A DNA stretch of 57,260 nucleotides, the filler included, from Bipalium vagum (taxonomy: Eukaryota): the NCBI GenBank assembly GCA_037834085.1. It is 3 parts of 3 records of this genome, joined end to end, with 100 filler letters (N's around TTAATTAATTAA, not from the genome) between each part and the next. Parts side by side here need not be neighbours in the genome. Positions count along the whole stretch, not along the records: positions 35,536 to 57,260 come from JBBMKC010233059.1; 2 more parts are not named here. One strand, written 5' to 3'. Of the stretch, positions 35,536 to 56,095 are shown one piece after another. How positions within the stretch are numbered: the stretch's first letter is position 1; every line of letters starts with the position of its first letter. The notes beneath the pieces are model-generated. The model saw only the letters and a list, made by a program, of their open reading frames with translations, did not search any database and was not told where the DNA came from. The translations under genes were made by a program, and so were the position numbers.

Positions 35536-37920
35536 GTGAAGAACGAACTAAAGTTCCAGTATTTAATGGAAATCCAGTAGATTTCCCAGAATTCACATCC
35601 GAGTACTATCTCTCAATGAAAGCATTGGGGAAGACGGATGAGCAGATGGTGACACGATTACCTCTGTCCCTTAGAGGACAAGTGTAGGCTTTCCACGGTG
35701 AAATCTTAGCTAAACATTTAGCTGATTACGAGGCTGCAATAGCCCTTCAACAGCTAAATGAAGGCCCGAATGCAGTGGTACAGCCATACAAACTAATTAC
35801 CTTTAAAGAGATAATAAAGTAATTAGAATTAAAAGTTCCCACAGGTGATGTGGGCAGATTATTAAGAAATAAATTCTATGAGCGCAAACAGCGTCATAAT
35901 GAACTTGTAGTAGAATACACCTTATCAATTAAATTTGTTGGCCAAGAGAGCCTTCGGACCAAAATCAAATTTGCCCGCAACTACGACAGTGATCGTAAAG
36001 AATCAATGGTAGACAGGATTAAACCCAGCCATTAGATTCCAATTAGTTTTATTTGGTACAGAACCAATGGATCAACTGGCACACGGCCACTATAGTTGAA
36101 GCAAGCCTAGAAACAAAACCAGTTTTAACTACCACGGTAACTCATAAAAAGACATGCAGTAATTGCAACCGAATGATAGAAATAATTATAATAATAGTAA
36201 ATATGAAAATAATCTTCAGAAAAGAAATTCTGCAAGAAACAATGAAAAATCAAATGCAGAGCTATGTCAGAAATGTGGTAAATCAAAGAATAATTCAAAA
36301 AATTGTTTTTTAACCAATCTTCATTGTCAGAATTGTGGTAGAGATAGGCATTTAAAAAAAGTTTGCTGGCGGACGCAGAGAAACACTAGAGAGGATGCAT
36401 CCAGACGGACCCTAATAAATTTAGAGGGTAAAATCCAATGTCACCTATGTGGGACATGTGGACATTTAGCCCGAAATTGCACAAAGACTAGAAAGTCGGA
36501 AAATGAATCAAAAACTTATCTCACCTCAAAAATGGATGAAGATTTTTGTTGAAGAAGACAATGGATATGAGTTATACTTAGAATCACTTTTGCAAGAGGA
36601 GCGTAGAAAAAACACCCGAAAATCAAATGATGATAAAATATCATCCATTATATCGAAATCGTCTAGTTCAAGAGAAGACTCAGAACGCATACCTGCACTT
36701 GTATTATCAGCAGAGGAAAAATTGAAAAAGTGGTTATCAGAACCAATTAATATTGAAAGTAGTAATGAAATTTTTACCACACTAAGAGACCCTTGCATTA
36801 GCAAAAAGAAATGCTGTCAGTTTTACGAAAATTGGGAACTGAGCAGCAAAAACAATATAAGGCGTTGCAATCAATTGCTCCTTATCGCGAATTAACTTGT
36901 TCTATTATGTTCGAAGTAAAATTAAAATGGCCCGAAGGTTGTATAACGACAACAGTAATGCATCCTTTAACGGATATTTGTGAGTTTGTACGAGATGTAC
37001 AAGTCATGTGCTCAGAGCAAAATAAAGAAGGAGTTGATATAACTTACTTTACCGAACCATTATTGGAAGATTAAAATCCAATAGAAAACGATCTATTAGA
37101 CGGATGGGATAATATCCTGATCATATCATATAAACCCAAAGAGGTAATAACATCCTTCTTCACTTGTGAAAGAGAGGAGAGAGACGAAGCAAAAAGGTCA
37201 TAAATGGAAAATATCGCGCAGTGGTTAGAAAATGAACTAACATGCGCAGTCCCCAACCAACAGAAATTAAAAAATTTATTGTCTGAGTTGGTGACACTCA
37301 CAATACCAGTGAAATTGCTGGACTTCTCGAAAACCAAGATGCATGATCATTGAAGATCAAATAAATGATAATAGACCCTATGTTCATATTAAAATCAATA
37401 ATCATGTTATACTTGCCTTAATAAACACCGGTTCAACAGCTTCTCTTATTCAAAAATCAATCCTCACACAAAATGAATTACAAATAATGGACACTACAAG
37501 ACATATGGTACTAGGCATAGGAAATATGCCTATTACCTAGGAGGAACGCTGAATTGTCAAATTGAGTTATTAAATCACCGATTAATGTGTAATATAAAGG
37601 CTGGAGAGGATAATGCACATGAATGTGTACTAGGAATGGATATTTTAAGACAAATTCCCGATTTAATGTTGATTTTTGAAACAGGAGAAATCTTTGATGC
37701 GAATAAAGCAAATACATCAAATAGCTCTCCAGGCGCTAGCCCAACCGCTAACAATGAAAACACAATTCATAACGACAATCCGGAAAATATACCAGACGAA
37801 GTCATCGAGCTTTCTCAAACGACAAATACAGAAATCATAATCGACATCTATACAAATCCGCCAGATCCCAATAGGTTAACATGGGATGATAAAATTGTTC
37901 AAAATATAATTAAATTTTGA
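35536..37920 (+). pseudogene. Ty3/Gypsy-like gag (capsid, 3 zinc knuckles), unknown segment and aspartic protease; disabled
   Basis: KVPVFNGNPVDFPEF; RKQRHNELVVEY; knuckles CQKC..SKNC, CQNCGRDRHLKKVC, CHLCGTCGHLARNC; protease RPYVHIKINNHVILALINTGSTASLI...CVLGMDIL (catalytic D reads N); several stops and frameshifts. Confidence 0.9.
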
Positions 37921-39558: not shown

Positions 39559-40825
39559 TTAAGGTGTCTCATAAAAAATGAGCGTTTTTGTTATAATGAC
39601 ATAAATTAAAGAAAATATGTTCTTGAATTAATAAATATAAAATATTGATTATTTATTTTGAATATTTAAAATTTTCTGAATAAAATAGTAATTTATATTT
39701 TTATTACATCTTGTTTTAATATTGAAATTAATAGCGCGAAAGATGACAATAAAATATGAAATTTTGGTTATTTTACTGCACTATTGGAAAAGAAAAATGT
39801 GTGCAACGGAAGCCACTCAACTTATTTCTGAAATTGACGGCCCAGATCAGATTAAACATAGTACAGCAAGACGGTGGTTTGCCAAGTTTAATTTTGATGA
39901 TACCAGCCTCAAACGCTAAACAGGTTCAGGAAGGTCCGCAACATTAGAAGATGACACTTTACAAAGTTATGTCCTTCTCAACCCGTCAATTGGCAGATAG
40001 TCTTTAATCTTCAAAATCAACCATCCATCGCCATCTTCGTGCAATGGTTAAAAAATATAGAGCTCCTCAAATACATCCTTATGAGTTGACAAAAGCTCAG
40101 ACAAGCAAGCGAGTTCAAGTCTGTCAACAGCTCTTAAATAACCCATTAGACGATAGGTTTTTAAAAACTATTGTTGCTATGGACGAAAAATGGATATTAT
40201 TAAACAATCCCAACAAAATAGGGCAATGGCTATCTCCAAATGAATCAGTTCTTTCGTATCCTAAACTCCGAAGATTTGACAAAAAAGTTATGATTTCCGT
40301 TTTTTGGAACTGTAACGGTATGTTGTTTTTTGAACTTCTCCGAGATGGTCAAAGTATAACCTCGGACACTTACTCATCACAACTGGAAAATCTTCATGAT
40401 GTTAAGAAAGTAAAGTATCCTTATTTAATCAACCGGAAAAGAGTTTTGCTACAAGCGGATAATGCTAAACCGCATACCTTGCGGAAATCAATAGAAACCA
40501 TAAAAAATATTGACGGAATCGAACTCTTACCGCATCCGCCTTACTCGCCAGACATTGCAGCCTCTGACTTTCATCTGTTTCGTTCCATGGCACATTTCAG
40601 TCGGGGGTTTGAAAATAATGAAGACCTTCAGAAGAACCTCCAACTTTTCTTCGACTCCAAACCATCAAATTGGTACAAAAGTGGGATCCAAAAAATTGCA
40701 GAACATTGGGCCCTTGTTTGTGCAAATGATGGATATTATTTTAGTAACTGATATTTGTTTTGTAAAATAAAATTTTTAAAAAGAATTTTTTATTCAAAAC
40801 GCTCATTTTTTATGGGACACCCTAA
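39559..40825 (+). mobile_element. Full-length mariner (1267 bp) with TA target duplication and disrupted transposase
   Basis: TIRs ttaaggtgtctcataaaaaatgagcgtttt / aaaacgctcattttttatgggacaccctaa; motifs IVAMDEKW, QADNAKPH, YSPDIAASDFHLF; stop at 39917-39919 in the N-terminal part. Confidence 0.97.
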
Positions 40826-43186
40826 TATAATGAAAATTTTCCTAGATGAAGTTCAAATTATAGCTTCATCAAATAAAAATATCTGCAATATATGCTCATT
40901 AGATATTCCAAGTATTATTATGGTTCAGAATTCAATAAATCATTCCGACAGTAATGAAGAAAATTTACCATTGTGGCAATCCTATTTTGGCAACATCTTT
41001 TTAGAATGAGCTATAAAAAGATTTAATTTCATGGAAACAATTTTTGATTGTCATTATGGGGAAAAACCAAGCAATACAAACATTTAAAAGTATAAAATAA
41101 TAAATATTATTGTTCTGTAAAAATTAATTGGTAAAAATTATAAGTGTTCTTATAAGAGTAGAAATAATAAGTAATAAAGTGAAAGAATTAAAAATTATTA
41201 AGCAGTATGAATTAGTAAAAGTTAGACAGAAAACTTTTTTCATTTCGCTGAAGCCGATCAGATAAAATGTTCAAAATCAGACTGAAAATTTTATTTCATA
41301 ATTGAAATATTCTAAATACTCTTAAAAAAGTTTTTCAACTTTTACATTTGAACGGCAGAACTTTTTAAAGATAAATTACCATATTTCAATAATTTGTTTG
41401 AATCGTTCTCCGAAATCAACTTCAAGTTTTATTTGATTCAAAAGGAGATGATAAATTATCAATTATAAAATGGATGTAACGGTAAGCTGGTTTTTATGTT
41501 ATGTTTTATTCATGTGAAAAGTTAAATACGAATTGGAAATTTTGCGATTTGAAAATCAAATTGGCTCTGAAAAAAATCGAATTGCTTTCCATTTAAATGA
41601 AACTATGTTCTCGATTCTCTCTCAAACCTTAGCGGCATCTTTTTGACGTTGACAAACAGCACGGCGTGGAAAGACTGTCCTGAAAAGGGTTTATAGTCGA
41701 CTTTGATCGTAAAATTTATCCTGACCTCTTTGTCAATTAGAGGGTCTTGGCAACGTTTACAGATGATTAAATCATAATCCTTTCAATTCATGATATTGAT
41801 GAGAGCTGTGCAACTATAAAGCAATGATGATGTTATGAAATAGGATATGAGAAGGGCCACTCGAAATTCTAGAGGTGTTAGTGGAAAATCGACTCCGTCT
41901 TGAAATATTCCATAGTGGTTTCCAAGGCTAACGTTAGAAACGTCACTAATTAGAATAATATAAGATTCCTTAAGCCTCTCAATATGGTCATACTGATATT
42001 GATTATGTCAGGTTATTGATTGAGAATGACTGTGATGTCGAGGATAGTGACGAGATTTTCGAATTAGTGGGTTGTTGAATTGGAAAAATCGCGAACATTA
42101 ATTCTGTTGTTTTCGTTTATAAATTGTGAATATTAAAACAAAAGCAAGATATTATTAGAAAATATGAAGGGAAATATCTCTGGTAAATCTTTTTTTTTGT
42201 TATAGTATATCAATATCTAACTCAGTTTAAAAGTGTACCAAACATTTTGGATATGATTGAGCAAAAATATCATATAGAGACATGTCTCCTACGATTGGAC
42301 GAATGCAAAAGAAATTCATGGCATCCTATGTCAAGTATTCAGTTTGCTTATTCCAATCTTACGTCAGCTCAGCGATGCAAACAAAGTTGCAAAATATTAT
42401 CTATTAAATCAATAAAATTAAATAAAAAAAAATTAATCTATCCAGAAATTTTTACACAAAATTCATTTCAAATTTTTTTTCTTAATTAACAAAAAGATTT
42501 TGAAAAAAAATCAATAATTTTCACATGAGATATTAAATAAAGGATAATTATATTGAACAAATCAAATAGTTATTAAAATTATGTACAGAAAGGTGCTTTA
42601 TAAACAATCGGGGTTGATAAATCAATTTACTTAGGTATCAATTTTACTTCGGTTATGCAACACCAAATACTTCTGAAATGACTGCGCAGGATTAAAGGGT
42701 GAGGATTTACCTCATACCTTATTCCTCGGACATTTCGCAAACATATCATCTAATCAAGAACATGAATAATAAAAATTTCCTCGACCTAGGTCACAATCAA
42801 AAGTGCCATTGATCCGTTCTTTGAATCCAGAAATTTGAATTTTTTCAAATTGGAATCAATAAAATATCGAGGACTTGGGCGGAGAAGTTCTATCTCACCC
42901 ACCATATAGGATTATCATTTGTTCTGGTTGATGGAGAGAAAATGCTCCAAGACTGAGACGTAATCAAAAATTGAGTTTCCAACTTCTTCAAGACACAACT
43001 AGCAGAATTTTTCTCCAAAGGTTTCCATTCATTACGTGGACGTTGCGACAGATAATTGATAGTGGTGGATAATACCTGCTCGAATATTATGTAATCTTGT
43101 TTTAATGTTTTTTTAGTAAAGAAAAACGAAATTTCCAATTCAACAACCTGGTGTTTTAAACAAAAAAGATTTAAAGCGATTTTAGG

Positions 43187-43593
43187 ATAAAAGGATAAAA
43201 ATTCATATTGGTTTCCAAAATGGTCATTTTGATATTCTCAATTTCTCCTTGAAAAGATTTGTAACCTTGAAGCTTGTGTGAACATTTATTCTGAATGATG
43301 CATAAAATAAAAAAATAATAATCTAAGATAATTGTAGACTTCTTCACGTTGCTTACGAAAAAGAGATATTAATGATGCCAAGTGTTTGATTTAGAATGGT
43401 GATTCTCACATGGTGATTTTCGTATTGTCAAATTATTGATTGAAAATGGTTGTGATATTGAAGCACTTGTCAATGTAAATGGTTTGATTAAAGCAAATTA
43501 AAAAAATAATTTCAGGACAATGTGAGACCCATTCATATTGAGTTGGAGAAAATATTGATTGAGTTTGGTTACGATATTGAAGCCTTGGCGAAA
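43187..43593 (+). pseudogene. About 4 decayed ankyrin-repeat exons at the 5' edge of the array
   Basis: Same unit as downstream, but with frameshifts, a TAG, a lost GT donor, a fused unit and an in-frame 7-aa deletion (43516-43593). Confidence 0.85.
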
Positions 43594-43635: not shown

Positions 43636-46600
43636 GATAACTTTCAACCCATCCACTTGGCCTCAGAAAATGGTCACACTGATATTGTCAAACTATTGAT
43701 TGAGAACGGTTGGGACATTGAAGCCTTGACAAACGTTACTGATTTTATATAAATAATATGTTAAAATAAATTCAGAATAAATCGCGACCGATCCACTTGG
43801 CTTCACAGAATGGTCATACTGATATTGTGAAATTGTTGATAGAGAATGGTTGCAACTTTGAGACTTGTAACGGGGTTATTAATTTAACCTTAATATACGA
43901 TTTTTAGATGAATTTAGGATGGGTTCAGACCTATTCACTTGGCTTACTCGAATAATCACATCAACATTATTAGATTATTAATTGAAAATGGATCTCAAAT
44001 TGGCGGTTGTTTCAAGGTAATTTTATCTTGTATCAATAGTTTTAAAGATACTCTTAGAATAATTCAACAGCCATTCACATTGCCACTCAGAAAGGTCATT
44101 TTGACATTGTCAAATTAATGATTGAGTATGGTTGTGATATTGAGACTTTAATTGAAGTTAATGATCTGTGTTCAGTAAAATGTTACTTAAAACCATTTTA
44201 GGGAGAAATGAGACCAATTCATATTGCCACACAATATGGTCACATTGATATTGTGAAATTATTGATTGACTTTGGTTGCGATATTGAAGTCTCGGCGAGC
44301 GTTAATAAAATATCCGTAAAATGTATTTTATAATAAATTCAGGATAACTCGCGACCCATCCATATGGCCTCTGAGCATGGTCATACTGATATTGTCAAAC
44401 TATTGATTGAAAACGGTTGTGACTTGGAAGCTTATGTCAATGTTATTATTTTTAAGTTCTTACAAGATATTATTATTATTATTAATTTAGGATAGTTGGA
44501 GGCCGATTCATGTTGCATCACAAAAGGGGTATATTGACATAGTGAAACTATTAATTGACGGTGGGTGTGATATTGAAGCTCGGAAAAATGTTTACAGTAT
44601 AACATCAGTTAGATAGAATTTTAAAAATGAATTCAGGAATGCTGGAGACCAATTCATTTTGCTTCAAAATATGGACATTATGAAATTGTGAAATTATTGA
44701 TTGAGAAGGGATGTGTCATTGAATGCCGTGTTGATGTTATTGAATGAATTTTGAAGTGTTTTCATTGAAATTGTTTCAGGATAATTCGAGACCCATTCAC
44801 CTGGCTTCTTTTAATGGTCATTTTGATATTGTGAAATTATTGATTGAGAACGGCTGTAATATTGAAGCTCGTGATGATGTTATAAATTTAATTTTAATAT
44901 TTATGTTGAAAATTTTTAAAAAATGAATTCAGGTTCAATTGAGACCTATTCACTTTGCTTGCTTTAACTGTCACACAGATATTATCAGATTACTAATTGA
45001 AAATAGATGCAACATTGAAGCCTCTGTCCAGGTTTTGTTACTATAAATAAATACTTTTAAAGTTGCTTTTAGAAATCGAAACCAATTCACATTGCTGTAC
45101 AGTATGGTCATATTGATATCGTCAAACTGCTGATTGAAAAAGGCTGTGACTTTGAATCAATGGCCCATGTAAGTGACTTGATATCAGCACAACTTTTTAA
45201 AAAAATGATTTCAGGATAATTTGCGTCCTGTCCATGTAGCTTCACAGAATGGTCATACTGATATTGTAAAACTGCTGGTTGAGAATGGTTGTAATGTTGA
45301 ATCTTTTGACATTGTTATTATTTTTGTATCAAAATTTTTTTTATTTTTAATTTAGTACAATTGGAGACCGATTCATGTTGCATCACAAAAGGGGTATATT
45401 GACATAGTGAAACTATTAATTGACGGTGGATGTGATATTGAAGCTCGGAAAAATGTTCACAGTATAACATCAGTTAGATAGAATTTTAAAAATGAATTCA
45501 GGATTGCTGGAGACCAATTCATTTTGCTTCAAAATATGGACATTATGAAATTGTGAAATTATTGATTGAAAACGGATGTGTCATTGAATGCTGTGTTGAG
45601 GTTATTAAATGAATCTTAACAAGTTTTTCATTGAAATTGTGTCAGAATAATTTGAGACCCATTCACCTGGCTTCTGATACTGGTCATTTTGATATTGCGA
45701 AATTATTGATTGAGAATGGTTGTAATATTGAAGCTTGTGATGATGTTATTAATCTAATCTCAATAAAATATTTTTATAATGAATTCAGGTCAACTCGAGA
45801 CCTATTCATTTGGCTGCTCAGAATGGCCATTTTGATATTGTCAAACTGCTGATTGAAAAAGGCTGTGACTTTGAAACTTTTGTCAATGTTATTATTTGTA
45901 TTTTCCGAGGTTATTTGTTCAGTAAATTTAGGATAATTGGAGACCGATTCACGTTGCTTCTCAAAACGGGTTTACAGATATGATAAAGTTTTTAATTGAT
46001 AATGGGTGTAATATTGAAGCTCTTAAAGACGTTATTTATTTAATCTTAATAAATATCATTTTTCGATGAATTTAGAATTATTGGAGAGCCATTCATTTTG
46101 CTTCCCAAAATGGAAATTTTAATGCTGCCAAATTACTGATTGAGAATGGTTGCGTCATTGAAAGTTGTCTGGAGGTTATTAACTCTGTCTTATAAAATGA
46201 ATTTTTCAGATGAATTTAGGACGATAGAAAGCCTATCCACTTGGCTTCCGGCAATGGTCATTTTGATATTGTGAAACTATTGATTGAGAATGGTTGTGAA
46301 ATTGAATCCAAAGATAAAGTAATTGATTTCATTTCATTCACTTTTGAAAACACTAAATTCAGCATAATCAAAGAGCAATTCATTTCGCTACTCGAAAAGG
46401 TTTCACTGAAATTGTCAAGTTATTGATTGAGTATGATTGTGATATTGAAGCTTGTGAAAAGGTTATTGATTTAATCTCAATATATTTTGTAAAATGAATT
46501 CAGGACAATTCAAGGCCAATTCATTTAGCTTGTTTGAATAAACACGTTGGTATTGTCAAGTTATTAATTGAAAATGGTTGTAACATTAACGCATGTGTTG

Positions 46601-47605
46601 AAGTTTTTCTTTTTCTATTTTAAACCAATATTTTGAGAAATAAACATAGAAAGATCTAAGACCCATTCATATTGCTATACGAAACGGTGACATGGATATC
46701 GTCAATTTGTTAATTGAGGGTGGCTGCGATATTGAAGCTTTAGCAGATGTAAAGAATTTGATATGAGTAAACATGTTTTTACCGATGATTCAGGACAACT
46801 CACGTCCCATTCATGTTGCTTCACAGCTAGGTCATATCGATATTGTCAAACTTTTGATTGAGAACGGTTGTGACTTGGAAGCTTTTGTCAATGTTATTAA
46901 TTTTATGTTCTTAAAATATATTATTATTAATTTAGGATAGTTGGAGACCAATTCACGTGGCATCACAAAACGGGTATATTGACATAGTGAAACTATTAAT
47001 TGACGGTGGATGTGATATTGAAGCTCGGAAAAATGTTTACAGTATAACATCAGTTAGATAGAATTTTAAAAATGAATTCAGGAATGCTGGAGACCAATCC
47101 ATTTTGCTTCCCAATTTGGACATTTAAATGTTGTGAAATTATTGATTGAGAACGGATGTATCATTGAATGCTGTGTTGAGGTTATTGAATAATCTTAAGA
47201 AAATGTATTTAAACGAATTTAGTACAATCGAACGCCCATTCATTTAGCTTCATGGTCTGGTCACCTGGAGATTGCGGCCTTGCTAGTGAAATACAATTGC
47301 AATTATGATGCTTGCACCATAGTAACAAATGATACGGTTGTTTTATTTCAGATGATAATCTACGTAGGATAATTGGAGACCCATTCATTTTGCGTCAATC
47401 AGAGGTTTCATTGAGATTGTCAAGTTGCTGTTTGAGACTCACTGTGATTTTAATTCCGTTTTAAAAGTATTATAAGCTGTAATTCAATGTAATTAAATAA
47501 TATTAGGGTAACTGGAGAGCCGTTAACCTGGCGGGGCTCCATGGTCAAATTGGCGTAGTAAAATTCTTACTGGAGAATCATTGCGAGTGTTACAATTTGG
47601 ACGAC
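43636..47605 (+). CDS. Ankyrin-repeat array: 28 consecutive phase-0 exons (27 x 99 nt, 1 x 96 nt) with 40-54 nt GT-AG introns
   Basis: Exon starts 43636, 43776, 43918, 44058, 44202, 44343, 44491, 44637, 44780, 44933, 45073, 45215, 45356, 45502, 45646, 45789, 45932, 46076, 46220, 46363, 46504, 46650, 46794, 46936, 47082, 47223, 47368, 47507. Consensus DNxRPIHxASxxGHxDIVKLLIENGCDIEAxxx; no stops in any exon. Confidence 0.97.
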
Positions 47606-47721
47606 GTAATGGATAGTCCTTTTATATTAGATTTCATTGATAATAATAATGATAGCATTAATGAAGCAGTAACTTATTATTATAATAAATAATATAATTT
47701 TTTCTTAATGATAATTTAAAG

Positions 47722-49470
47722 GGAGATACTTTTTTGTTTTCTTTCCGAAAATGGGTAATCTATCTTTTCCTCTGATGAGCTCTTACTGATTGAACCACTG
47801 ATCTGAACGAGGCGGCAAGGAAAGTCACCTGAATAATCTCATTGATTGGCAGTTAATACTGTCTACATCAGTTATTTCTTTTTTTCTCATAGCAAAGGCT
47901 GCCTCAGGTTTCTTTGATGACCTGTTGCCAGTCAGGGAAAGCTTCAATTGGCTCTCGTATGCTTTAAATCAGAGTTGAGATTGACAGCTGGACTGAGACA
48001 GGAATCACTTATTGAATTGCTAAAGTGAAAAAAACGATTATTATGTTGGCAAGGTGAAGTCAAATATTGATGCTAAAGTGAAATGAGTATTTTGGTTATT
48101 ATTCATATTACTTTTGTTTATTGTCATTTCTGAGTTCCGCAGATGCTAACCGAAGGACTTGGAGTATCTGCAATCTGTGGGAGTATTCTGCTTTCCTTTG
48201 ATTTTTCGCGTGTTTAACCTATAATCTGTGGAGGTTTCCTTAAGACTTAAATAATATTTTACTTTCAGTACTTGATCTGTCAAACGCTCAATTTTAACTG
48301 TCACACAAACGGTATGAAATATTTAGTTACTACATCTTAATTTACTTAGGTCCATAAATACTAATCGATTGTAAGTCAAACTAGAGTCTGACTCTAGATT
48401 ATGAATTGCATAATGTTGCATAATTTTGCTCATCTCACCTACATCTTAACGACAGTTGTTGATTTACTTACGATATACGGCTCAGTGCTCATTTCTTCAC
48501 GAGTTACTTAATTAAATTGATTAATAATTAATTATAATTAATCTATTAATTTCTTTTATTGTGATTCCATGAAACCCTTATTTAACCTATTATTTCGTTT
48601 TTCGTATTCTACATTTTGTCATATTTATTTAGAATCATTTTACCTTTTTCTTATTATTTTTGTTTATTATAGATATCCTTAATTTATATCGCTCGTTCTA
48701 TATATCAGTAGTGGCATGTATTTTTTACTATTTTCCTTAATGAAATACGTAAATTCCAGCTCATTTTCCAACTCCTCACTTCGTTACTATCGTGTTCATT
48801 TTATAAAAACGATTACAAAAATGTATACTCTGCTGAATCAAGACAATCACAATAAAATCTTATCACAGTTCTCATCCCTAAGTAAATCAAAACAATCTCA
48901 GAAAACCACAGTAAATGATTGGAATTCACTAAAATAATAACGAATCAGTCAATTGTCAATTTTACGTGCAACTTTTATTGAACCAGCTTCGATTTTTATC
49001 TGGTAGGGTTAAGTACTCTTTGTCTTTCCACGTGTCTTTCAGAAGTTTTCGATCAAAATAATCCTGGAGAACAGCCGCAGAGAAATATAAATGATATCTG
49101 GAAATTGTGTATCATTCTTAATTTACTTGTACTTTATTCGTAGGATGATAGAAAGGCTTTGTTGAATGCCGAGGACGAGGGTTCCATACAAGAGATGATT
49201 TTTAAGATGAACTGTAAGTCATTTTTATTTATTTACTTTTGACAGACAATCGGCCGATTTCTCATGAACCTCGAAAGGTTTTGATTTAAAACGAGAAAAC
49301 AGGTAATGTCTTGCTGAGACATTACCGTAGAGGATTGGATGATTCCTTGAAGTGTTGTGTCTGTCGGAAACAGAAAAATGAATTGGGACAGCTTCATAAC
49401 ATCTTCACTAACGTCTTGGATCCTAAATTTATCTCTGCCCATTTCTTTTTTTCTTTGTCAGCGATTATAA
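47722..49470 (+). pseudogene. Exon-like linker segments between the ankyrin array and the kinase, with stops and frameshifts
   Basis: GC-richer blocks separated by about 35-40 nt GT-AG introns (e.g. 49144-49213 DDRKALLNAEDEGSIQEMIFKMN); in-frame TAA at 49287-49289 and several TGA codons in 47780-48030. Confidence 0.5.
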
Positions 49471-49513: not shown

Positions 49514-52500
49514 CTCCGTGTTTTACAACGTCCAAAGAGCTTCCGGGTATTGGAAGAGGAAGTTACGGAGAAGTGTTTAGAATCGACGACTTGAAGCAAA
49601 GTTTCGCAGTGAAGATAATTTGTAAAACAAAAGAATGGAAACCGAACGAGAAAAGAATTGAAGAAAATCTATGCCGATTTCGGAAGGTTCTCAGCCATAA
49701 GAATATTGTGGAATACATTGGAGAAGGATCGGACAAGGAAAACTGGTTTGTATACATGAAGTTTGCTGAAGGGGTACGTGGATTTATTATTATTATTTTT
49801 TATCGATTATTATTACTGTCTGACCATAAACAAATAGAGAAGGTATGTAATATTTATAAGATTTGGAATTTTTTGTGATAGATATCAAATGATGATCAAA
49901 GGTCAAAATGATACACTCTCAAAATCATTTTATTAAACGAACAAAGCTGTTCATTAAAACCATTTTTTTTAATTAAAATTATTCTTGTCCCTTTGATTCG
50001 TTCAGAAAGCTTCTTATTCTTTTATTCTCCCTCTTCTATTTGCCAATATCTCTTTCAAGATTCTTCATTTAAATGAAAGAGGGTCGAGTGTTAAGGCTTA
50101 TCATGATTTGAAGATTCTTGAAGATTCTTGATAAGACAAAAACTTTGATTCTCTCTATCAAGAATTTTCTAAGGTAAGAGTTATAATAAAAAATGTAGGA
50201 GGATGAAATATTTTATAAATGATTAGAAAATATAATTGAAAATGTCATTCAGGGCACTCTGAGTCGAAGAATTCAAGATGGACCTCTGTCTCACGAGAAG
50301 ATAATTTATTACGACAAGCAAATCCTGGAGGGTCTGCAATACATTCATTCCCACAGAATCATTCATCGGGACATCAAACGTAAAATTCTATTTAAATCTA
50401 TGCCAAATGAGTGAACACTTTTGAAGGAGGACATTCTTATATTTTATTCGATTATTTTATTTTGGAACACTAAGGATTCCAAAGGTGCTTCAGTTAAAGT
50501 ATCACTCTTGATATCTTTGGTCAGAGCGGATGCTTTTAGGTTGATAGGTAATAATGTCCACTTTTAACCTCCAACTTAAAACTCTCAGACAAATCAGGTT
50601 CAAATAGACTTTATTAAATGGGTTGAACTAGTAGTAATAATTTAAGTACTGAGTCGTTATCTTCCCCATCACTTAATGTTGGTGTTAATGACGAAAAAAA
50701 ATCAGTTCAACAATAAATCGTTATTGACAATAAAACAATGGTTAACAATAATATAAAATACTCCACAACCACCAATTCCTGTTATTTGAAATCAATTAGA
50801 TCACTATCACTCTTAACCAATGTCAAACAGTAAAATATACACAAAACAAATATAAATCAATAACAGTGAATCGATAGTGCAATAAATGAATTTAATCAAG
50901 CAATGAAATCAAAATGAAAAATAGTTTTAAATAATTAAAATATGAAAATTAAAAGTAAGTAGATAAAAAGCAAATAATCAATTGAACTAATCCTTTGATC
51001 GTCCGTTAGACGCATCTAAAGACGAACTCTGTAATGTTCTTTAAAAAATATTGAAGCAAAGAAACGTACTTAGGATCTTGTTCAAAATATAATTTTCTTC
51101 AGAATAATAATAGTGTTCCTCTTTAAAATCTTCATCGAATTGAATCGCAATAAACGTACTGATTTTGTTGGTAAATTTACCTGATTTGCCACTTTGAATA
51201 CAAGATCACCAAGAGTTCATTATCCGAGTAATGACATCTTGAATGGAAAAATTTTCATAAAAAACAATCCTAAATTTCCCTGAGTGGCAAAACCTTTCCA
51301 AATATAGCCACAACTCAAGTAATTCAATTACAATTTTACAATTTAAAAATATTTATTTATTATAAGTAGTATTTAAATATTATTATTATCCTTCCGGAGT
51401 CCACTTGTGCGTTCTTCCAAAATTCCCTTCGAAAACGCTGCTGGGCAAAACCCAAAAATGAAATAAAAAGTATTTTACATAATATTACATAACAAATAAT
51501 TAATAATCAATAAAAGTATAACATTTGTTTAAATATTACAACTTTTTAGTGAAAGATTCAAATATGGTAAAAATACAGCTATGAACGATTTATCTTTATC
51601 AATTCGAAAAAATCAAATTGATAAAAATGGCTTATCACGCCGAAACATCAATGATGCATTCGGCCAGGAACCAGTTAACCAGGGTACCGTACGTGGATAA
51701 ATTCAATATATTATTAGATCCGATCTAGTTTCTTCTAGATATTATTGATCAATTTTAATTTAAGACTTATGTTGCCCTTAAGTGATCAAAATTATTTGAT
51801 TATGAAACTATTCATCATCTAACTGATGATTATTTCTAATCTCCAAGTGTTTTTTTCCATATCGAAGAAATATATTTTACCATGTTATCACTTTATCATA
51901 TTTATGACATTTTATTCTGATACTGTTACGAGACACCACATCTTTTGACATTTTACTATTTGGTGACTCCAGAGGTAAACCATAAACCATCTCTCTTCTG
52001 TTGACGATATATAACCATGGTCCACATATTTCTCTTGTCGTCCCATATTGTATCTCAATCTCTTCCTTCGTCGCTCGTCATTCCTCCATCCTTACGAGCA
52101 TTTCAATCTTCTTCCTATTGTACCAACTACTGTTACTCCTCTCTGAGAGCATTTAATCACTTTCTAAATCTTCATTTATTCGATCACGCACATTCTATTT
52201 ATTTATTTGAACTCCACCCGGGGTCATTCAGGTGTTCTTGTCTAAATAAAATATTAAAAAAGAAAAAGCAGTTATGTTGGGGGAGATCAGAAAGGGTTTA
52301 TCCATTTCAAAGTGCCACTCTTCTCAAATTATTATAATTATTTGTTTTTCAAAAGCTATTATTTGTTTTAATTACCAAAGCGGAAAATATCTTGATCGAT
52401 GCCAAGGATACACTGAAGATATGCGACTTTGGACTGAGTCGATTTCTTAGGAGGCCTGGTTCGAGTCCCACAAGAGAAGTTGCTGGGTTGAATTCCTTCA

Positions 52501-55500
52501 ATCTTTTTGATACCTATGAATCTGAAAATGATGGGACGCCTGCATATCAGGCTCCCGAGATCGGTACTGAGGGGCTCTATTACTTTTCCTCGGATATTTG
52601 GTCATTTGGAGCAACAAAAGTAGCTATGTTGTCAGGTAGGTTCAATATCACTGATATATCAATAAATGCTTGGCTGAGATTACGACAAATCATCCCTGTG
52701 TTTTTAAATATTTTTTCTGTTTATATCAGGTTGTCCCACACGAAATGGTGGTTTTCAAAACACAACCGAACCACAAATTTTATTCACTGCTCTCAATAAA
52801 CCTCTGCCACTGAGACAATCAGTCATAAATTCCGTTTTCACAAAAATCAGAATTTCTGAATTCAAAGAATTGAAGAATGACATTTTAATTTTCACCTTTG
52901 TTACGAATGATCTCATTGGTCAGAAATATGTTCATAATTTGTACATTTCATAATCTGTTGGTGACAGTTCCGGATAAGTTAAAAGAAGTAACATGTCATA
53001 ATCCAACTCATGTAACTTTTGTGCTGTTATTCTCGAAACATGTGGTCTTGCACTATCATGGACTAAGATTGGTCCCTTTATATTTACAACAGGTCCTTCA
53101 TTTTCGTTGCCATTTCACTGAGCTGTCATGGATTCACCAGGTGTTAAAAAGTTATGTTGATCTAATCCAGCTGCAGAACATCAAAATGTGATCATAGTCT
53201 TATTGGTTTGAAGGCTTTACTTAGATACGTTTTGATATTTCTCTAAATCCAACCATTGTAATGATTTTAGTGATTGTCACGTAAGGCCTCCTCTCTCTAC
53301 AGGTTATAGTTCGAGATAAAATGGGTCAAATGGAAAACAATTTAATTCTTCTATCTTGTTTATCATTTAATTGGTGTGTTATTCATTTATCGAGTTTTTA
53401 ATTTACCATGCTTTTGAAGATGCCGAGAAATTTTTTCCTTGATAATACTGGATGCTTCATCTAGCTCTCAAACCATTTCCCACGTATCCCCTTCAGCTAT
53501 TACTTTTAAATAATCAAATTACGACAGTAGTCGGTCTTTGACGGTCATCACTTTCAACACTGACGTTCCCACCTTAAATTTCGGAATATATCTTTGTGTT
53601 GATCTTATGCTTACAGAAATCATTGTCCCATGCGAAACTTATTTTTTGTGTTGCTTCTGGTGCAATATGACAAAGCTTAATTTTATAAAAATGCAAAGTC
53701 CATTATGTTATTTAATCATGTCCCAGAAATTCCAGAAATAACGTTTAATTTTAAGCTGAACTGTTTACTTTTAGCATTATATATGAAAAAGCGAAACTGG
53801 CGCTTCAGTTTGATATATTAAAACGATAATTAATTATAAAAATTGATTGATTAACGAATCCTTAAAATAATAAAACTAAAGTTCACATTTCCAAGTGGGA
53901 CAACCAGGTAAAATATTTAAAAGTTAAAAACTCTTGAAATAAAAATTTTAAAGTGTAATTAAAATAAAAAATTATAAAAGGAAAAAGAAAATGTGTTAAA
54001 TTTAAAATATCTTCTCAATTTTTTTGACTTTTTTCAATAAAAAGTTCGAAAGGTCATTGATATTTTTAAAACTAATTAGGCGACCCTCACCTCTCCCTTG
54101 AAATTAATTAATAAAAATGGTAATATTATGAGGAGAGACTAATCAGACTAAAAATAAACTTATTTTTAAAATTTAATAAAAAAAGGAATTTCTAGATCTC
54201 AGAAAATTTTTTTAAATATTATTTTGTCTCCAACCAAAAACGTTCTATAAGGGTGACGATGTTGAAAAATACATCGCGCAGTGCTTAAGATATTAACGGT
54301 GAAAGAGATATCAGTGAAAATAAGGAAAACATTGATCTATTGTTGATCTATCTATTGAAAAAGCGCTGATTAGATGCATAAACGACCCAGAAAGTGAGAA
54401 GGAGATCGAAATGAGAAAGTTAGGAAGTATTGAAGAAATTGAATATTTAATTAGATTAATAGATTGAATCCGACAGAAACAATTGTGAGGATCGGTAGAT
54501 TCCAAAATGTATGGATACAGGAAGCAGGATATAAGATTCGACCTGTTATAGAGCAAGGCAGACCAGAATCTTGTATTACTAGACCTTTTGCAAGAAGGGC
54601 AAACGATGTCCTGAAAAATCAATGCTGGAGCTGAAAAAGTTGCTTATTATATGAAAGACAGTTACTCAACTCCAAATTTGAAGGAAAAAGTTCAGGAGAT
54701 AATTAAAACGTGTGGAGTTTGTCAGAAATATAGAATATAAAAAAATATATCCTTGGTATTATAAATAAATATAGCAAATATATTTCGTTGACCGCTATGG
54801 TAAGACAAGATGAAAACTCTGAAAAATATAATTATGAATCATTGGATACTGGAGTTCGGAAACCCAAAAACAATAAATGTAGATTATGGTAAAGTTTTTG
54901 AATCTAAAGCCATGAAGGATTTTGCAAAGAGAGTTAATGTCAATCTCTGTTTTTCGAAACCATACCATCACAACAAAAATGGAAAAATAGAAAGACAATT
55001 CAGAACCGTGTGGGATTTGTTGAACGCAACTTTAAGCGAAAGAGGGACAAACGACTGGGCCGAGATTCCACCGGACGTAGAATTTGCTGTCAATTCTACG
55101 CTACAGAAAACAATCGGAATAAGTCCGGCTGAAATGATGTTTGGTAGAAAGATCTACAAAGATAGAATATATAAGGCAGTTGAGAAACAGATTTCAAAAA
55201 TAAAAGATAATACATTTGCTGTAGGAGAAAAAGTGCTAGTGAAAGCCGACGCTCGAGGAAAACAAAATGAAAGATATTAAGGACTATATGAGATCATTCT
55301 AAAAGTCAAATTTGTAACGTATTACCAAAGGCAAATGAAAAACAAATTTATAGGAATGTCGAGAAAATTAAAAATATTTTGAGAACTGGGTTATGAGAAG
55401 GTTATTCAGACCTGGAGAATTTTTAATTATTTATTTTAATTATTATAAAACTGTAACCATTATAACCTAACAAGTAACCTTCGCTCGTCTATCGACAGCT

Positions 55501-56095
55501 CCTCACTTTAATGTGTTGTGTTCGTTTTTTCGAATTTTAAACCAAAATGAATCAAAACACCAACTGTAATACTTTATCCGCATCCTAAAAGCTGAATCAA
55601 AACACTCACAATAAAACTTTATTCACTCTATCACAACAATTAAAAATTAAAATCAATTCATAAATCAAATCAAAATCGTAAATCTATCAATGTCTGAAAT
55701 AAAATAAAATCAAGTCCAATCGCAATGTTAATAATAAAGAAAACTATAATCAAATCAATAATCAATAATAATAATTAAGTAACGAAAATGGAAACAAAAT
55801 AAGGCTTTTTAAAGATAAAAATTTTTTGTTGTTATTATTATTATTAATAATATCAACATTAATTAATACTGTTATTATTCTTTTTTGTATTTTAGGAAAG
55901 CCCCCTTTCGATTCAGAATCCGATCCCACCATCAAGATAGAGAATGAGCAGACAATCCACTTTGTCCCTCTGGAGCCGATTTCAAAGGAAATGAAATATG
56001 TTTTGGTTCGAGCTCTTCATCCTAACCCAAGACTTCGACCCACAGCCCATGTGCTTCTTCAAAGCAGACTTTTTTCAAGTGTTTCTCAAAACTAG
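49514..56095 (+). CDS. Ser/Thr protein kinase, MAP3K/STE11-like; exons 49514-49773, 50253-50379, 52381-52635, 55896-56095
   Basis: Spliced in frame: IGRGSYGEV, FAVK, HKNIVEY, KQILEGLQYIH, IIHRDIKPENIL, KICDFG, GTPAYQAPE, SDIWSFG, GKPPF, RPTAHVLL; all junction phases agree. Confidence 0.93.
54560..55400 (+). mobile_element. Ty3/Gypsy integrase remnant inside the last kinase intron
   Basis: VQEIIKTCGVCQK zinc finger; PKTINVDYGKVF; SKPYHHNKNGKIERQFRT; GISPAEMMFGR; FAVGEKVLVK..Y*GLYEI (GPY/F module). Confidence 0.9.

What the first reader, a model, noticed from the sequence alone, without database searches (positions are those of the whole stretch)
43636..47605. Natural DARPin-like array: one ankyrin repeat per mini-exon, variable at the binding surface
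Seen: 28 stop-free phase-0 exons with a near-fixed scaffold (PIH-A, G, DIVKLLIE, GC-IE). Residue diversity is high at exon positions 1, 3, 11-12 and 31-33; positions 11-12 read EN, QN, SN, QK, QY, EH, KY, FN, DT, GN, RK, LN, RN, QL, QF, WS, IR, LH. Known: these map to the beta-turn and first-helix positions that form the ankyrin binding surface and are randomised in DARPin libraries. One repeat per 99-nt exon is also seen in vertebrate ankyrins, so the architecture alone is not new. Inference: a modular recognition repertoire, analogous to exon-shuffled LRR/TPR candidate receptors of brown algae but built on ankyrin repeats.
Basis: partly seen in the sequence, partly recalled or inferred. Interest (0 to 1): 0.88.

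Follow-up and report, generated by a model that had tools for sequence, protein, structure and literature searches.

The report
Ankyrin exon array before a kinase
The 28 small exons, each coding one ankyrin repeat, are real and most likely form the protein-binding arm of a kinase gene, but their variable positions are the ones that vary in every ankyrin protein, so this is a long ordinary repeat domain, not a shown receptor repertoire.

Summary
43636-47605 (+) carries 28 stop-free phase-0 exons (27 of 99 nt, one of 96 nt) with AG/GT borders and 40-54 nt AT-rich introns. 27 of 28 match Pfam Ank in exact register. The most variable codons (32, 33, 11, 31, 12, 15, 1, 3, 2) include the six DARPin-randomised positions.

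The same variability pattern appears in all 15 unrelated long ankyrin proteins I measured, and it is published as a general property of ankyrin repeats. Surface codons evolve at or below the neutral rate: omega is about 1.0 in recent duplicates and 0.4-0.5 by maximum likelihood over all repeats. Scaffold codons are under purifying selection (0.16-0.23). Mean repeat identity is 52%, not the >85% of known diversifying ankyrin receptors.

- Five decayed repeat relics lie upstream (41973-43593).
- Blocks of 2-3 exons were recently duplicated, with mosaic similarity that suggests gene conversion.
- An all-in-frame AG/GT model joins exon 28, through a 70-nt exon, to four exons of a complete Ser/Thr kinase ending at 56095.

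No RNA data were available, and no paralogues could be counted. Verdict: a new member of a known kind, of low to moderate interest.

The parts
43636..47605 (+). Array of 28 ankyrin-repeat exons (27 x 99 nt, one 96 nt at 45073-45168), all phase 0, separated by 27 introns of 40-54 nt
   Evidence: coordinates, AG/GT, translations; 27 of 28 hit Pfam Ank; 3e-31 chance of no stop; GC 37% against 20.7%
44343..44878 (+). Duplicated block, copy A (exons 6-9)
   Evidence: Exons 7, 8 and 9 are 95, 95 and 91% identical in DNA to exons 13, 14 and 15. Exons 6, 7 and 8 are 84, 94 and 87% identical to exons 23, 24 and 25.
45215..45744 (+). Duplicated block, copy B (exons 12-15)
46794..47180 (+). Duplicated block, copy C (exons 23-25). 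Similarity ends in the intron after exon 25.
   Evidence: the intron after exon 7/13/24 is 0-2% divergent, while the flanking exons are 5-7% divergent.
41973..42053 (+). Decayed repeat relic: lacks the first 23 nt of the unit and has a 6-nt insertion
   Evidence: nhmmer E = 1e-11
43201..43281 (+). Decayed repeat relic with a 1-nt deletion and an in-frame stop
   Evidence: nhmmer E = 6e-10; sequence read
43327..43473 (+). Two fused partial relics (unit positions 1-74, then 32-98) with a frameshift and a stop
   Evidence: nhmmer E = 4e-4 and 2e-12
43516..43593 (+). 78-nt stop-free phase-0 exon-like unit with AG/GT borders and a 21-nt (7-codon) internal deletion. Either a shortened 'exon 0' or a relic.
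   Evidence: It matches the repeat profile in two pieces. It has no Pfam hit on its own.
47606..49143 (+). Inferred 1538-nt intron after exon 28
   Evidence: Exon 28 ends at a GT donor. No RNA family was found and only one 14-nt inverted repeat.
49144..49213 (+). Inferred 70-nt linker exon: phase 0 in, phase 1 out, GTAAGT donor
   Evidence: Its start resembles the start of a repeat, but it hits neither the repeat profile nor Pfam.
49514..49773 (+). Kinase exon 1 (glycine loop, catalytic lysine, helix C)
   Evidence: Pkinase E = 1e-7; in-frame model
50253..50379 (+). Kinase exon 2, ending in HRDIK
   Evidence: Pkinase E = 2e-10
52381..52635 (+). Kinase exon 3 (PENIL, DFG, APE, DIWSFG)
   Evidence: Pkinase E = 2e-15; nearest solved chains are OSR1, SPAK and MEK1
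55896..56095 (+). Kinase exon 4 (subdomains X-XI), ending at the TAG stop at 56093-56095
   Evidence: Pkinase E = 1e-3

Best explanation
This is the ankyrin-repeat domain of a large cytoplasmic protein in an AT-rich eukaryote with small introns. Each 33-residue repeat is one symmetric phase-0 exon. The array grew by tandem duplication of whole exon-plus-intron units of about 143 bp. It is still being remodelled by block duplication and short gene-conversion tracts, and it is decaying at its 5' edge. The repeats stack into a solenoid. The scaffold residues (PIH, A, G, IVKLLIE, GC) are held by purifying selection. The hairpin tip and the end of helix 1 are free to vary from repeat to repeat, as in all ankyrin proteins, and together they form one long, heterogeneous binding groove. 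The array most likely splices through a 70-nt linker exon to a catalytically complete Ser/Thr kinase at the C-terminus. The groove would then dock partners, substrates or an anchoring site for that kinase. Shown: the exons, the ankyrin identity, the selection pattern, the duplications and relics, and the kinase exons with their frame compatibility. Inferred: that the introns are spliced, that the array and the kinase are one transcript, and the docking role.
For: - Exon structure and coding signal.
- Pfam Ank in register. The nearest solved chains are ankyrin-1/2, consensus ankyrin designs and DARPins.
- The scaffold is under purifying selection even among the youngest duplicates (12.5 non-synonymous against 22.5 synonymous changes, ratio 0.16, binomial p = 5e-8), while the surface ratio is 1.0-1.2. 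ML omegas are 0.17-0.21 for the scaffold, 0.40-0.50 for the surface and 0.26 overall.
- Block duplicates and the mosaic of similarity.
- Conserved intron ends (donor GTTATT, acceptor AATTYAG) show that exon and intron were duplicated together.
- Upstream relics.
- One reading frame runs from exon 28 through 49144-49213 and four kinase exons to a stop at 56095. It has AG/GT at every junction, no internal stop and every catalytic motif present.
- An environmental contig (L004) has the same RPIH-type repeats as 96-99 nt mini-exons with 45-61 nt introns.
- Long ankyrin arrays followed by a C-terminal kinase exist elsewhere (P0032, P0101).
Against: - There is no RNA evidence. The single public run that holds the locus is not RNA, and read laying laid nothing.
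- No start codon exon was identified. Upstream lie only relics and two transposable elements.
- 21 of 28 donors have T at +3, while the five non-repeat junctions of the model use GTA. Splicing efficiency is therefore uncertain.
- The two junctions that link the array to the kinase rest on frame compatibility alone, roughly a one-in-three coincidence each.
- The linker exon has no detectable domain.
Confidence: 0.6

Rival explanations
1. One reading: the array is a diversifying recognition module, a natural DARPin-like library. Its surface codons are driven to change by positive selection, and its exons are reshuffled within and between many paralogous loci to make a receptor repertoire.
For: - Non-synonymous changes in recent duplicates fall mostly on surface codons (Fisher p = 0.004 for the six a-priori sites, p = 1.5e-5 for the top nine).
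- In exons 8/14/25, 9/15 and 11/16, surface codons show 5-7 non-synonymous changes and no synonymous ones.
- All exons are symmetric, so duplication, loss or skipping keeps the frame.
- Block duplications and relics show turnover.
- Weak GTT donors would be compatible with exon skipping.
Against: - Surface omega is not above 1 (1.03 and 1.17, binomial p = 0.71 and 0.40; ML 0.40-0.50).
- The same variability pattern occurs in 15 of 15 unrelated ankyrin arrays and is a published general property (PMC1261162).
- Repeats are old and diverged: pS is 0.69, mean identity 52%, and 4 of 378 pairs reach 85%. This differs from the concerted, >85% identical repeats of fungal NLR ankyrin domains (PMC4986451).
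- There is no NACHT/NB-ARC or other receptor-type domain; a kinase follows instead.
- No close paralogue was found in three database searches.
Confidence: 0.1
2. Two separate genes: an ankyrin-only protein that ends in exons not recognised here, and an independent kinase gene starting between 47606 and 49513.
For: - 1.5 kb separates exon 28 from the next candidate exon.
- The linker exon has no domain match.
- The kinase's nearest solved relatives are STE-group kinases, which do not carry ankyrin repeats.
- There is no RNA support for the two joining junctions.
Against: - Exon 28 ends at a GT donor in an open frame with no stop, so it needs a downstream exon.
- The first kinase exon starts in phase 1 only about 10 residues before the glycine loop and has no in-frame ATG, so it needs an upstream exon.
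- The 70-nt exon satisfies both phases with strong AG and GTAAGT sites.
- Nothing else coding was seen in between, on either strand.
Confidence: 0.2
3. A 5'-truncated array that is no longer expressed, on its way to becoming a pseudogene. It would have been cut off from its promoter and first exons by transposon insertions.
For: - Five decayed relics lie directly upstream.
- A mariner copy (39692-40748) and an LTR-retroelement fragment (35536 to about 39300) sit upstream.
- No start exon was found.
- Donors are weak.
- No RNA run holds the locus.
Against: - 923 codons plus the 336-residue downstream model have no stop.
- Scaffold codons show strong purifying selection even on the youngest duplicate branches.
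- All 56 splice dinucleotides are intact.
- The kinase motifs are complete.
- Any loss of function would have to be very recent.
Confidence: 0.1

Closest known systems
Membrane-binding domain of canonical ankyrins (ANK1/2/3; PDB 4rlv, 5y4d, 7tw3)
   Same: They are the best solved-structure matches to the repeat profile (E = 1.7e-83 to 1.3e-76). Both have a long solenoid of more than 20 diverged repeats. From my own knowledge, not checked here, most repeats in vertebrate ankyrins are also encoded by single 99-bp exons.
   Different: There are 28 or more repeats rather than 24. RPIH replaces TPLH, and GC.IE replaces GA.VN. The array is followed by a kinase, not by ZU5-UPA-death domains.
DARPins and consensus-designed ankyrin proteins (PDB 6mol, 5le2, 1n0r, 4gpm)
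   Same: They share the 33-residue register, and the six library positions coincide with high-entropy codons 33, 1, 3, 11, 12 and 31.
   Different: DARPin scaffolds are identical between repeats and carry dedicated caps. Here the non-surface positions also vary (mean 1.2 bits; 52% mean identity). The resemblance is what any natural ankyrin array shows.
Ankyrin domains of fungal NOD-like receptors (Dyrka et al. 2014, PMC4986451; examples P0011 and P0036, HeLo-NACHT-ANK)
   Same: They are natural ankyrin arrays whose variable sites lie on the concave binding face. There are signs of recombination between repeats.
   Different: The fungal arrays have over 85% internal identity, repeat-number polymorphism and demonstrated positive selection, and they sit behind a NACHT/NB-ARC domain. 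None of these is met or shown here.
Ankyrin-plus-kinase proteins (ILK and TNNI3K from my own knowledge; P0032 and P0101 found here)
   Same: N-terminal ankyrin repeats with a C-terminal kinase domain. P0032 and P0101 carry ankyrin repeats over most of the 1,280-1,440 residues that precede their kinase.
   Different: P0032 lies among bacterial genes and has no introns. Its kinase is of the Tyr/Ser-Thr (TKL-like) type and is barely alignable to this one (27% over 81 residues, E = 0.026). This kinase is nearest to STE-group chains.
Exon-per-repeat LRR and TPR candidate receptors of brown algae
   Same: One repeat per symmetric exon, which allows frame-preserving duplication and loss.
   Different: Those are large multigene families with documented exon exchange between loci. 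Only one locus is visible here, and no family could be found.
Environmental contig L004 (Ga0307474_10379078) and P0016 (Glandiceps talaboti XP_077996865.1)
   Same: L004 has RPIH-type repeats with a Cys at the same scaffold position, as 96-99 nt mini-exons with 45-61 nt introns, in 32% GC DNA. P0016's repeat consensus has QPIH and ENGC motifs.
   Different: In L004 the intron lies one codon further 3', and the donors are GTAAAT. P0016 continues into COR-A/COR-B (ROCO-type) domains, not directly into a kinase.

Membership tests
Ankyrin repeat (Pfam PF00023, clan Ank) | 33-residue unit matching the family profile | tested here: met
   27 of 28 exons match Ank, Ank_2, Ank_3, Ank_4 and Ank_5 (best E = 5.4e-9). 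Exon 1 scores 32.4 bits against a cut-off of 21.1, with positions 5-33 on model positions 5-33.
Ankyrin repeat (Pfam PF00023, clan Ank) | T-P-L-H motif at the start of helix 1 | tested here: inconclusive
   P, (I/V) and H are kept in 24, 28 and 27 of 28 repeats. The Thr is Arg in 23 of 28, so the motif is RPIH rather than TPLH. The top 150 database hits hold few RPIH-type motifs (at most 6 per protein), and none pairs them with the LLIE.GC motif.
DARPin-like library architecture | Variability confined to the six randomised surface positions on an otherwise fixed scaffold | tested here: not met
   Surface positions are the most variable (2.57 bits). However, positions 2, 15, 32, 30, 8, 27, 24 and 10 also carry 1.9-2.9 bits, and mean identity is 52%.
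Diversifying ankyrin receptor domains (fungal NLR type) | High internal repeat conservation (over 85%) from concerted evolution | tested here: not met
   4 of 378 repeat pairs reach 85%. Synonymous sites are saturated between most repeats (pS 0.69).
Diversifying ankyrin receptor domains (fungal NLR type) | Positive selection (omega above 1) at binding-face codons | tested here: not met
   pN/pS is 1.03 (six sites) and 1.17 (nine sites) in recent duplicates, not significantly above 1. ML omega is 0.40 and 0.50. The sample is small and the deep branches are saturated, so weak selection is not excluded.
Diversifying ankyrin receptor domains (fungal NLR type) | Repeat-number polymorphism between individuals | not testable with these tools
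   Only one run holds the locus, and read laying laid nothing.
Diversifying ankyrin receptor domains (fungal NLR type) | Association with a NACHT or NB-ARC domain | tested here: not met
   The only non-TE domains found in the stop-free stretches scanned between 35536 and 57260 are Ank and Pkinase. The 5' end of the gene is unknown.
Exon-shuffled repeat receptor families (brown-alga type) | One repeat per symmetric exon | tested here: met
   All 28 exons are phase 0-0 and 96 or 99 nt long.
Exon-shuffled repeat receptor families (brown-alga type) | Many paralogous loci exchanging exons | not testable with these tools
   Only this piece of the genome is available. Searches found no close relative except one 1.1-kb environmental contig.
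Ankyrin-repeat protein kinases | Ankyrin array and kinase domain in one reading frame | tested here: inconclusive
   An all-AG/GT, stop-free, phase-consistent model exists from exon 28 to the stop at 56095. There is no transcript evidence.
Ankyrin-repeat protein kinases | Catalytically complete kinase domain | tested here: met
   The glycine loop, VAIK lysine, HRD, the catalytic-loop Asn, DFG, APE and the subdomain XI Arg are all present in the exon translations. Four pieces hit Pkinase.
Canonical ankyrins (ANK1-3 / UNC-44) | ZU5-UPA-death domain module after the repeats | tested here: not met
   Downstream exons encode a kinase and the frame stops at 56095.

The most novel reading that the evidence does not exclude
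The array is one member of a lineage-specific family of RPIH-type ankyrin-kinase sensors. In this reading, symmetric mini-exons with weak GTT donors are duplicated, converted and perhaps alternatively skipped, so that a single locus yields many binding grooves coupled directly to a kinase output. That would be an ankyrin-based counterpart of exon-per-repeat LRR/TPR receptors.
Probability: 0.08. Interest if true: 0.7.

Novelty: new member of a known kind. Interest (0 to 1): 0.25.

Why it matters
As it stands, this is a clean example of how a long repeat domain is built and maintained at the DNA level. Exon-plus-intron units are duplicated in tandem, short conversion tracts ignore exon borders, one edge is decaying, and selection holds the fold while the binding face drifts. 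The finding would become important only under two conditions. Transcripts would have to show combinatorial exon use, or population and genome-wide data would have to show many such arrays under diversifying selection. That would add ankyrin repeats, coupled to a kinase, to the short list of natural repeat-based recognition repertoires. The RPIH variant of the TPLH motif and the run of GTT donors are small oddities worth recording for anyone annotating this genome.

Tried and rejected
- The look-up of sequencing runs gave one non-RNA run, probably the source sample.
After that, no letters of 45320-45355 went to any database, pattern, paper or RNA-family search. The Rfam scans were split around them. 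Local scripts that read the whole piece did include them.
- The search for homologous proteins with a 52-residue read-through ORF around exon 6 found one unrelated fragment. Its length window cannot reach full-length relatives.
- The profile search of 1.84 billion representatives returned 183,098 ankyrin proteins. The listed top 150 are giant TPLH-type proteins, not this subfamily.
The second gave 80 loci, of which only L004 is of the same kind.
- The look-up of encoding contigs had no record for P0016.
- A mariner search, meant to hint at the organism, gave an 89% Logan hit without a name. The organism stays unidentified.
- A codon-model tree search timed out. I used a FastTree nucleotide topology instead.
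- No site-model test (M7/M8, MEME) was run, because neither codeml nor HyPhy is installed.
- Literature searches for the 99-bp exon structure of vertebrate ankyrin genes found nothing citable, so that point rests on my own knowledge.
- The spliced protein was joined only inside local scripts, to check frames. Surface mapping rests on profile register.
- A ciliate origin with DNA-eliminated spacers was considered and rejected: there is no in-frame TAA or TAG in about 1,260 codons, and the borders are GT-AG.
- No Rfam family was found anywhere in the piece.
Full report
**What is there**

The piece 35536-57260 is AT-rich (27-37% GC). On the + strand between 43636 and 47605 lie 28 open segments, each bounded by AG and GT. 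Twenty-seven are exactly 99 nt. The one at 45073-45168 is 96 nt. The spacers are 40-54 nt long. Their lengths fall in all three residue classes modulo 3, and 19 of 27 contain a stop when read through. Exon GC is 37% against 20.7% in the spacers. The exons hold no stop in 923 codons, which has a chance of 3e-31 given their composition. Their other two frames hold 184 stops. These are therefore real coding mini-exons of a eukaryote with short introns.

27 of 28 exons match the Pfam ankyrin models. For the exon whose match was shown, exon positions 5-33 align with Pfam Ank positions 5-33. A profile of the 28 repeats finds ankyrin-1/2, consensus-designed ankyrin proteins and DARPins as the best solved structures.

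**The variability claim**

Column entropies rank positions 32, 33, 11, 31, 12, 15, 1, 3 and 2 highest. A9 is invariant, and I6, H7, L20, L21 and C26 are at least 90% conserved. The register of the PDB matches is query 3-32 on DARPin residues 48-77 and query 2-32 on 1n0r residues 2-32. This puts DARPin module position p at exon position p-2. The six randomised DARPin positions (2, 3, 5, 13, 14, 33, from my own knowledge of Binz et al. 2003) therefore correspond to exon positions 33, 1, 3, 11, 12 and 31.

Two family-specific features stand out. Arg replaces the Thr of TPLH in 23 of 28 repeats, giving RPIH. Cys occupies position 26 in 26 of 28 repeats.

**Is the pattern special?**

No. I extracted the repeats of 15 unrelated long ankyrin proteins from the representative search and computed the same entropies. 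In all 15 the six DARPin-equivalent positions are more variable than the rest. The rank correlation with this array is 0.43-0.72. The ratio here (2.57 against 1.20 bits) lies within their range. Magliery and Regan showed in 2005 that hypervariation alone identifies the binding positions of ankyrin repeats in general, and that these are the positions randomised in the DARPin libraries (PMC1261162). The pattern is a property of the fold.

**Selection**

- Most repeats are old. Pooled pS between repeats is 0.69, which is saturated. Mean amino-acid identity is 52%, and only 4 of 378 pairs reach 85%.
- On a fixed nucleotide tree, a GY94 model gives these omegas: 0.40 for the six a-priori surface codons, 0.50 for the nine most variable, 0.21 and 0.17 for the remainder, and 0.26 overall.
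- I then restricted the count to the five youngest duplicate groups (7/13/24, 8/14/25, 9/15, 6/23, 11/16). There, surface codons show pN/pS of 1.03 (six sites) or 1.17 (nine sites), and neither is significantly above 1.
- In the same groups, scaffold codons show 0.23 or 0.16, significantly below 1 (p = 5e-8).
- The non-synonymous to synonymous ratio differs between the two classes (Fisher p = 0.004 and 1.5e-5).

The scaffold is under clear purifying selection, so the array is, or very recently was, functional. The binding face evolves at about the neutral rate. That pattern fits relaxed constraint. It does not demonstrate diversifying selection, although the sample is too small to exclude a weak effect.

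**How the array evolves**

Exons 7-8-9 and 13-14-15 are 95, 95 and 91% identical in DNA. Exons 6-7-8 and 23-24-25 are 84, 94 and 87% identical. Similarity is mosaic. A tract of about 130 nt, from mid exon 7 through the 47-nt intron into exon 8, is almost identical in all three copies. The intron there is 0-2% divergent, while the flanking exon parts are 5-16% divergent. That is what short gene-conversion tracts superimposed on older block duplications would give.

The cluster of differences in exon 25 (codons 10-17) is not a burst of change. Exon 25 there resembles exon 18 (my reading of the sequences), and exon 18 is the sister of the 8/14/25 group in the tree.

Intron ends are conserved across all units: donor GTTATT, acceptor AATTYAG. 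The duplicated unit has therefore always been exon plus intron.

Upstream, nhmmer finds five further copies on the same strand at 41973-42053, 43201-43281, 43327-43399, 43407-43473 and 43517-43590. They carry truncations, 1-nt deletions and stops. One of them, 43516-43593, is a stop-free 78-nt unit with intact AG/GT and a 7-codon deletion. The array thus decays at its 5' edge.

**What gene it belongs to**

Exon 28 ends in an open frame at a GT donor, so a downstream exon is required. On the same strand, four segments match the protein kinase domain. A model with AG/GT at every junction joins these exons:
- exon 28 (47507-47605)
- a 70-nt exon (49144-49213, GTAAGT donor)
- kinase exons 49514-49773, 50253-50379, 52381-52635 and 55896-56095

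All phases are consistent, there is no internal stop, and a TAG lies at 56093-56095. The translation contains the glycine loop, the VAIK lysine, HRDIKPENIL, DFG, APE, DIWSFG and the subdomain XI arginine. The first kinase exon starts in phase 1 about ten residues before the glycine loop and has no in-frame ATG. It too needs an upstream partner. The kinase is nearest to STE-group chains (OSR1, SPAK, MEK1), but only weakly.

The kinase introns hold transposon debris, namely an integrase fragment at 54804-55277. Upstream of the array lie a degenerate mariner (39692-40748) and an LTR-retroelement fragment with an aspartyl protease match (37313-37537). No first exon with a start codon was identified. 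A 12-nt ATG...GTAAGC segment at 41470-41481 is only a guess.

The joined translation was made only inside a local script, to check frames. No joined sequence was given to any search or folding tool.

**Relatives**

- The profile search of 1.84 billion representatives found 183,098 ankyrin proteins. The 150 best by summed score are giant TPLH-type proteins. None has the combination of RPIH and the GC scaffold motif.
- The nearest-looking one, P0016, is an uncharacterised protein of the hemichordate Glandiceps talaboti, with ankyrin repeats followed by COR-A and COR-B domains.
- P0011 and P0036 are fungal HeLo-NACHT-ankyrin proteins.
- P0032 and P0101 carry long ankyrin arrays followed by a C-terminal kinase. 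P0032 sits among bacterial genes, and its kinase is unrelated to this one.
- A metagenome scan returned 80 generic ankyrin loci. Only one, L004 (1,098 nt, 32% GC), shows the same design: four RPIH-type repeats as 96-99 nt exons with 45-61 nt introns, and then what looks like a capping repeat. Its intron is shifted by one codon and its donors are GTAAAT.

The subfamily therefore exists outside this genome, but its size is unknown.

**Comparison with known systems**

Natural ankyrin arrays that do act as diversifying recognition modules are already described in fungal NOD-like receptors. They show over 85% internal identity, repeat-number polymorphism between isolates, and positively selected sites on the concave face (PMC4986451). 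This array meets none of the features I could test.

One repeat per 99-bp exon is also known from vertebrate ankyrin genes. That point comes from my own knowledge, and the searches found no citable text. Ankyrin repeats in front of a kinase are known from ILK and TNNI3K (my own knowledge) and were seen here in P0032 and P0101.

**What could not be done**

- No RNA run holds the locus.
Those letters were kept out of all later external searches.
- The organism was not identified. Mos1-type mariner copies, an LTR element, GT-AG introns of about 45 nt and the standard genetic code suggest a small-intron invertebrate animal, but that is inference.

**Verdict**

The most likely reading is a long, ordinary ankyrin scaffold of an ankyrin-kinase gene that evolves by tandem duplication and conversion. 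It is a new member of a known kind.

Noticed in passing
window 43735-47506 (the 27 introns of the array, plus the donor after exon 28): 21 of 28 donor sites have T at +3 (consensus GTTATT). The five non-repeat junctions of the same gene model use GTA (GTAATG, GTAAGT, GTACGT, GTAAAA, GTAGGT), and the relative L004 uses GTAAAT. Weak donors confined to the repeat exons are unexplained.
   Followed up: partly
window 39692-40748 (+): Degenerate Mos1-type mariner copy, with the HTH_48 and Transposase_1 domains in different frames. It is 89% identical over 247 residues to a 342-residue transposase known only from Logan/JGI/ENA contigs (P0156).
   Followed up: partly
window 35536 to about 39300 (+): Fragment of an LTR-type retroelement running in from the left edge of the piece. 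It has Cys/His-rich gag-like ORFs (36163-36549, no Pfam hit) and a retroviral aspartyl protease match at 37313-37537.
   Followed up: partly
window 54804-55277 (+) and 52935-53114 (-): Transposon debris inside the long kinase introns. The first is an integrase-core (rve) fragment. The second is a minus-strand ORF that looks to me like a mariner C-terminus but gave no Pfam hit.
   Followed up: partly
L004:71-780 (metagenome contig Ga0307474_10379078): An environmental relative with RPIH-type ankyrin mini-exons (96-99 nt), 45-61 nt introns and what looks like a terminal capping repeat. Its intron position is shifted by exactly one codon relative to the window.
   Followed up: partly
Nothing else about the stretch looks unusual. 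It was kept out of all later external searches.
   Followed up: no
window 41470-41483 (+): A 12-nt ATG-initiated segment followed by a strong GTAAGC donor, in phase 0. It could be a first coding exon spliced over the relics to 43516 or 43636. This is pure conjecture.
   Followed up: no
P0016 (XP_077996865.1, Glandiceps talaboti): A hemichordate protein with 15 QPIH/ENGC-type ankyrin repeats followed by COR-A and COR-B domains, a ROCO-like architecture. Its repeats are among the highest-scoring per repeat against this array's profile among the database hits examined.
   Followed up: partly
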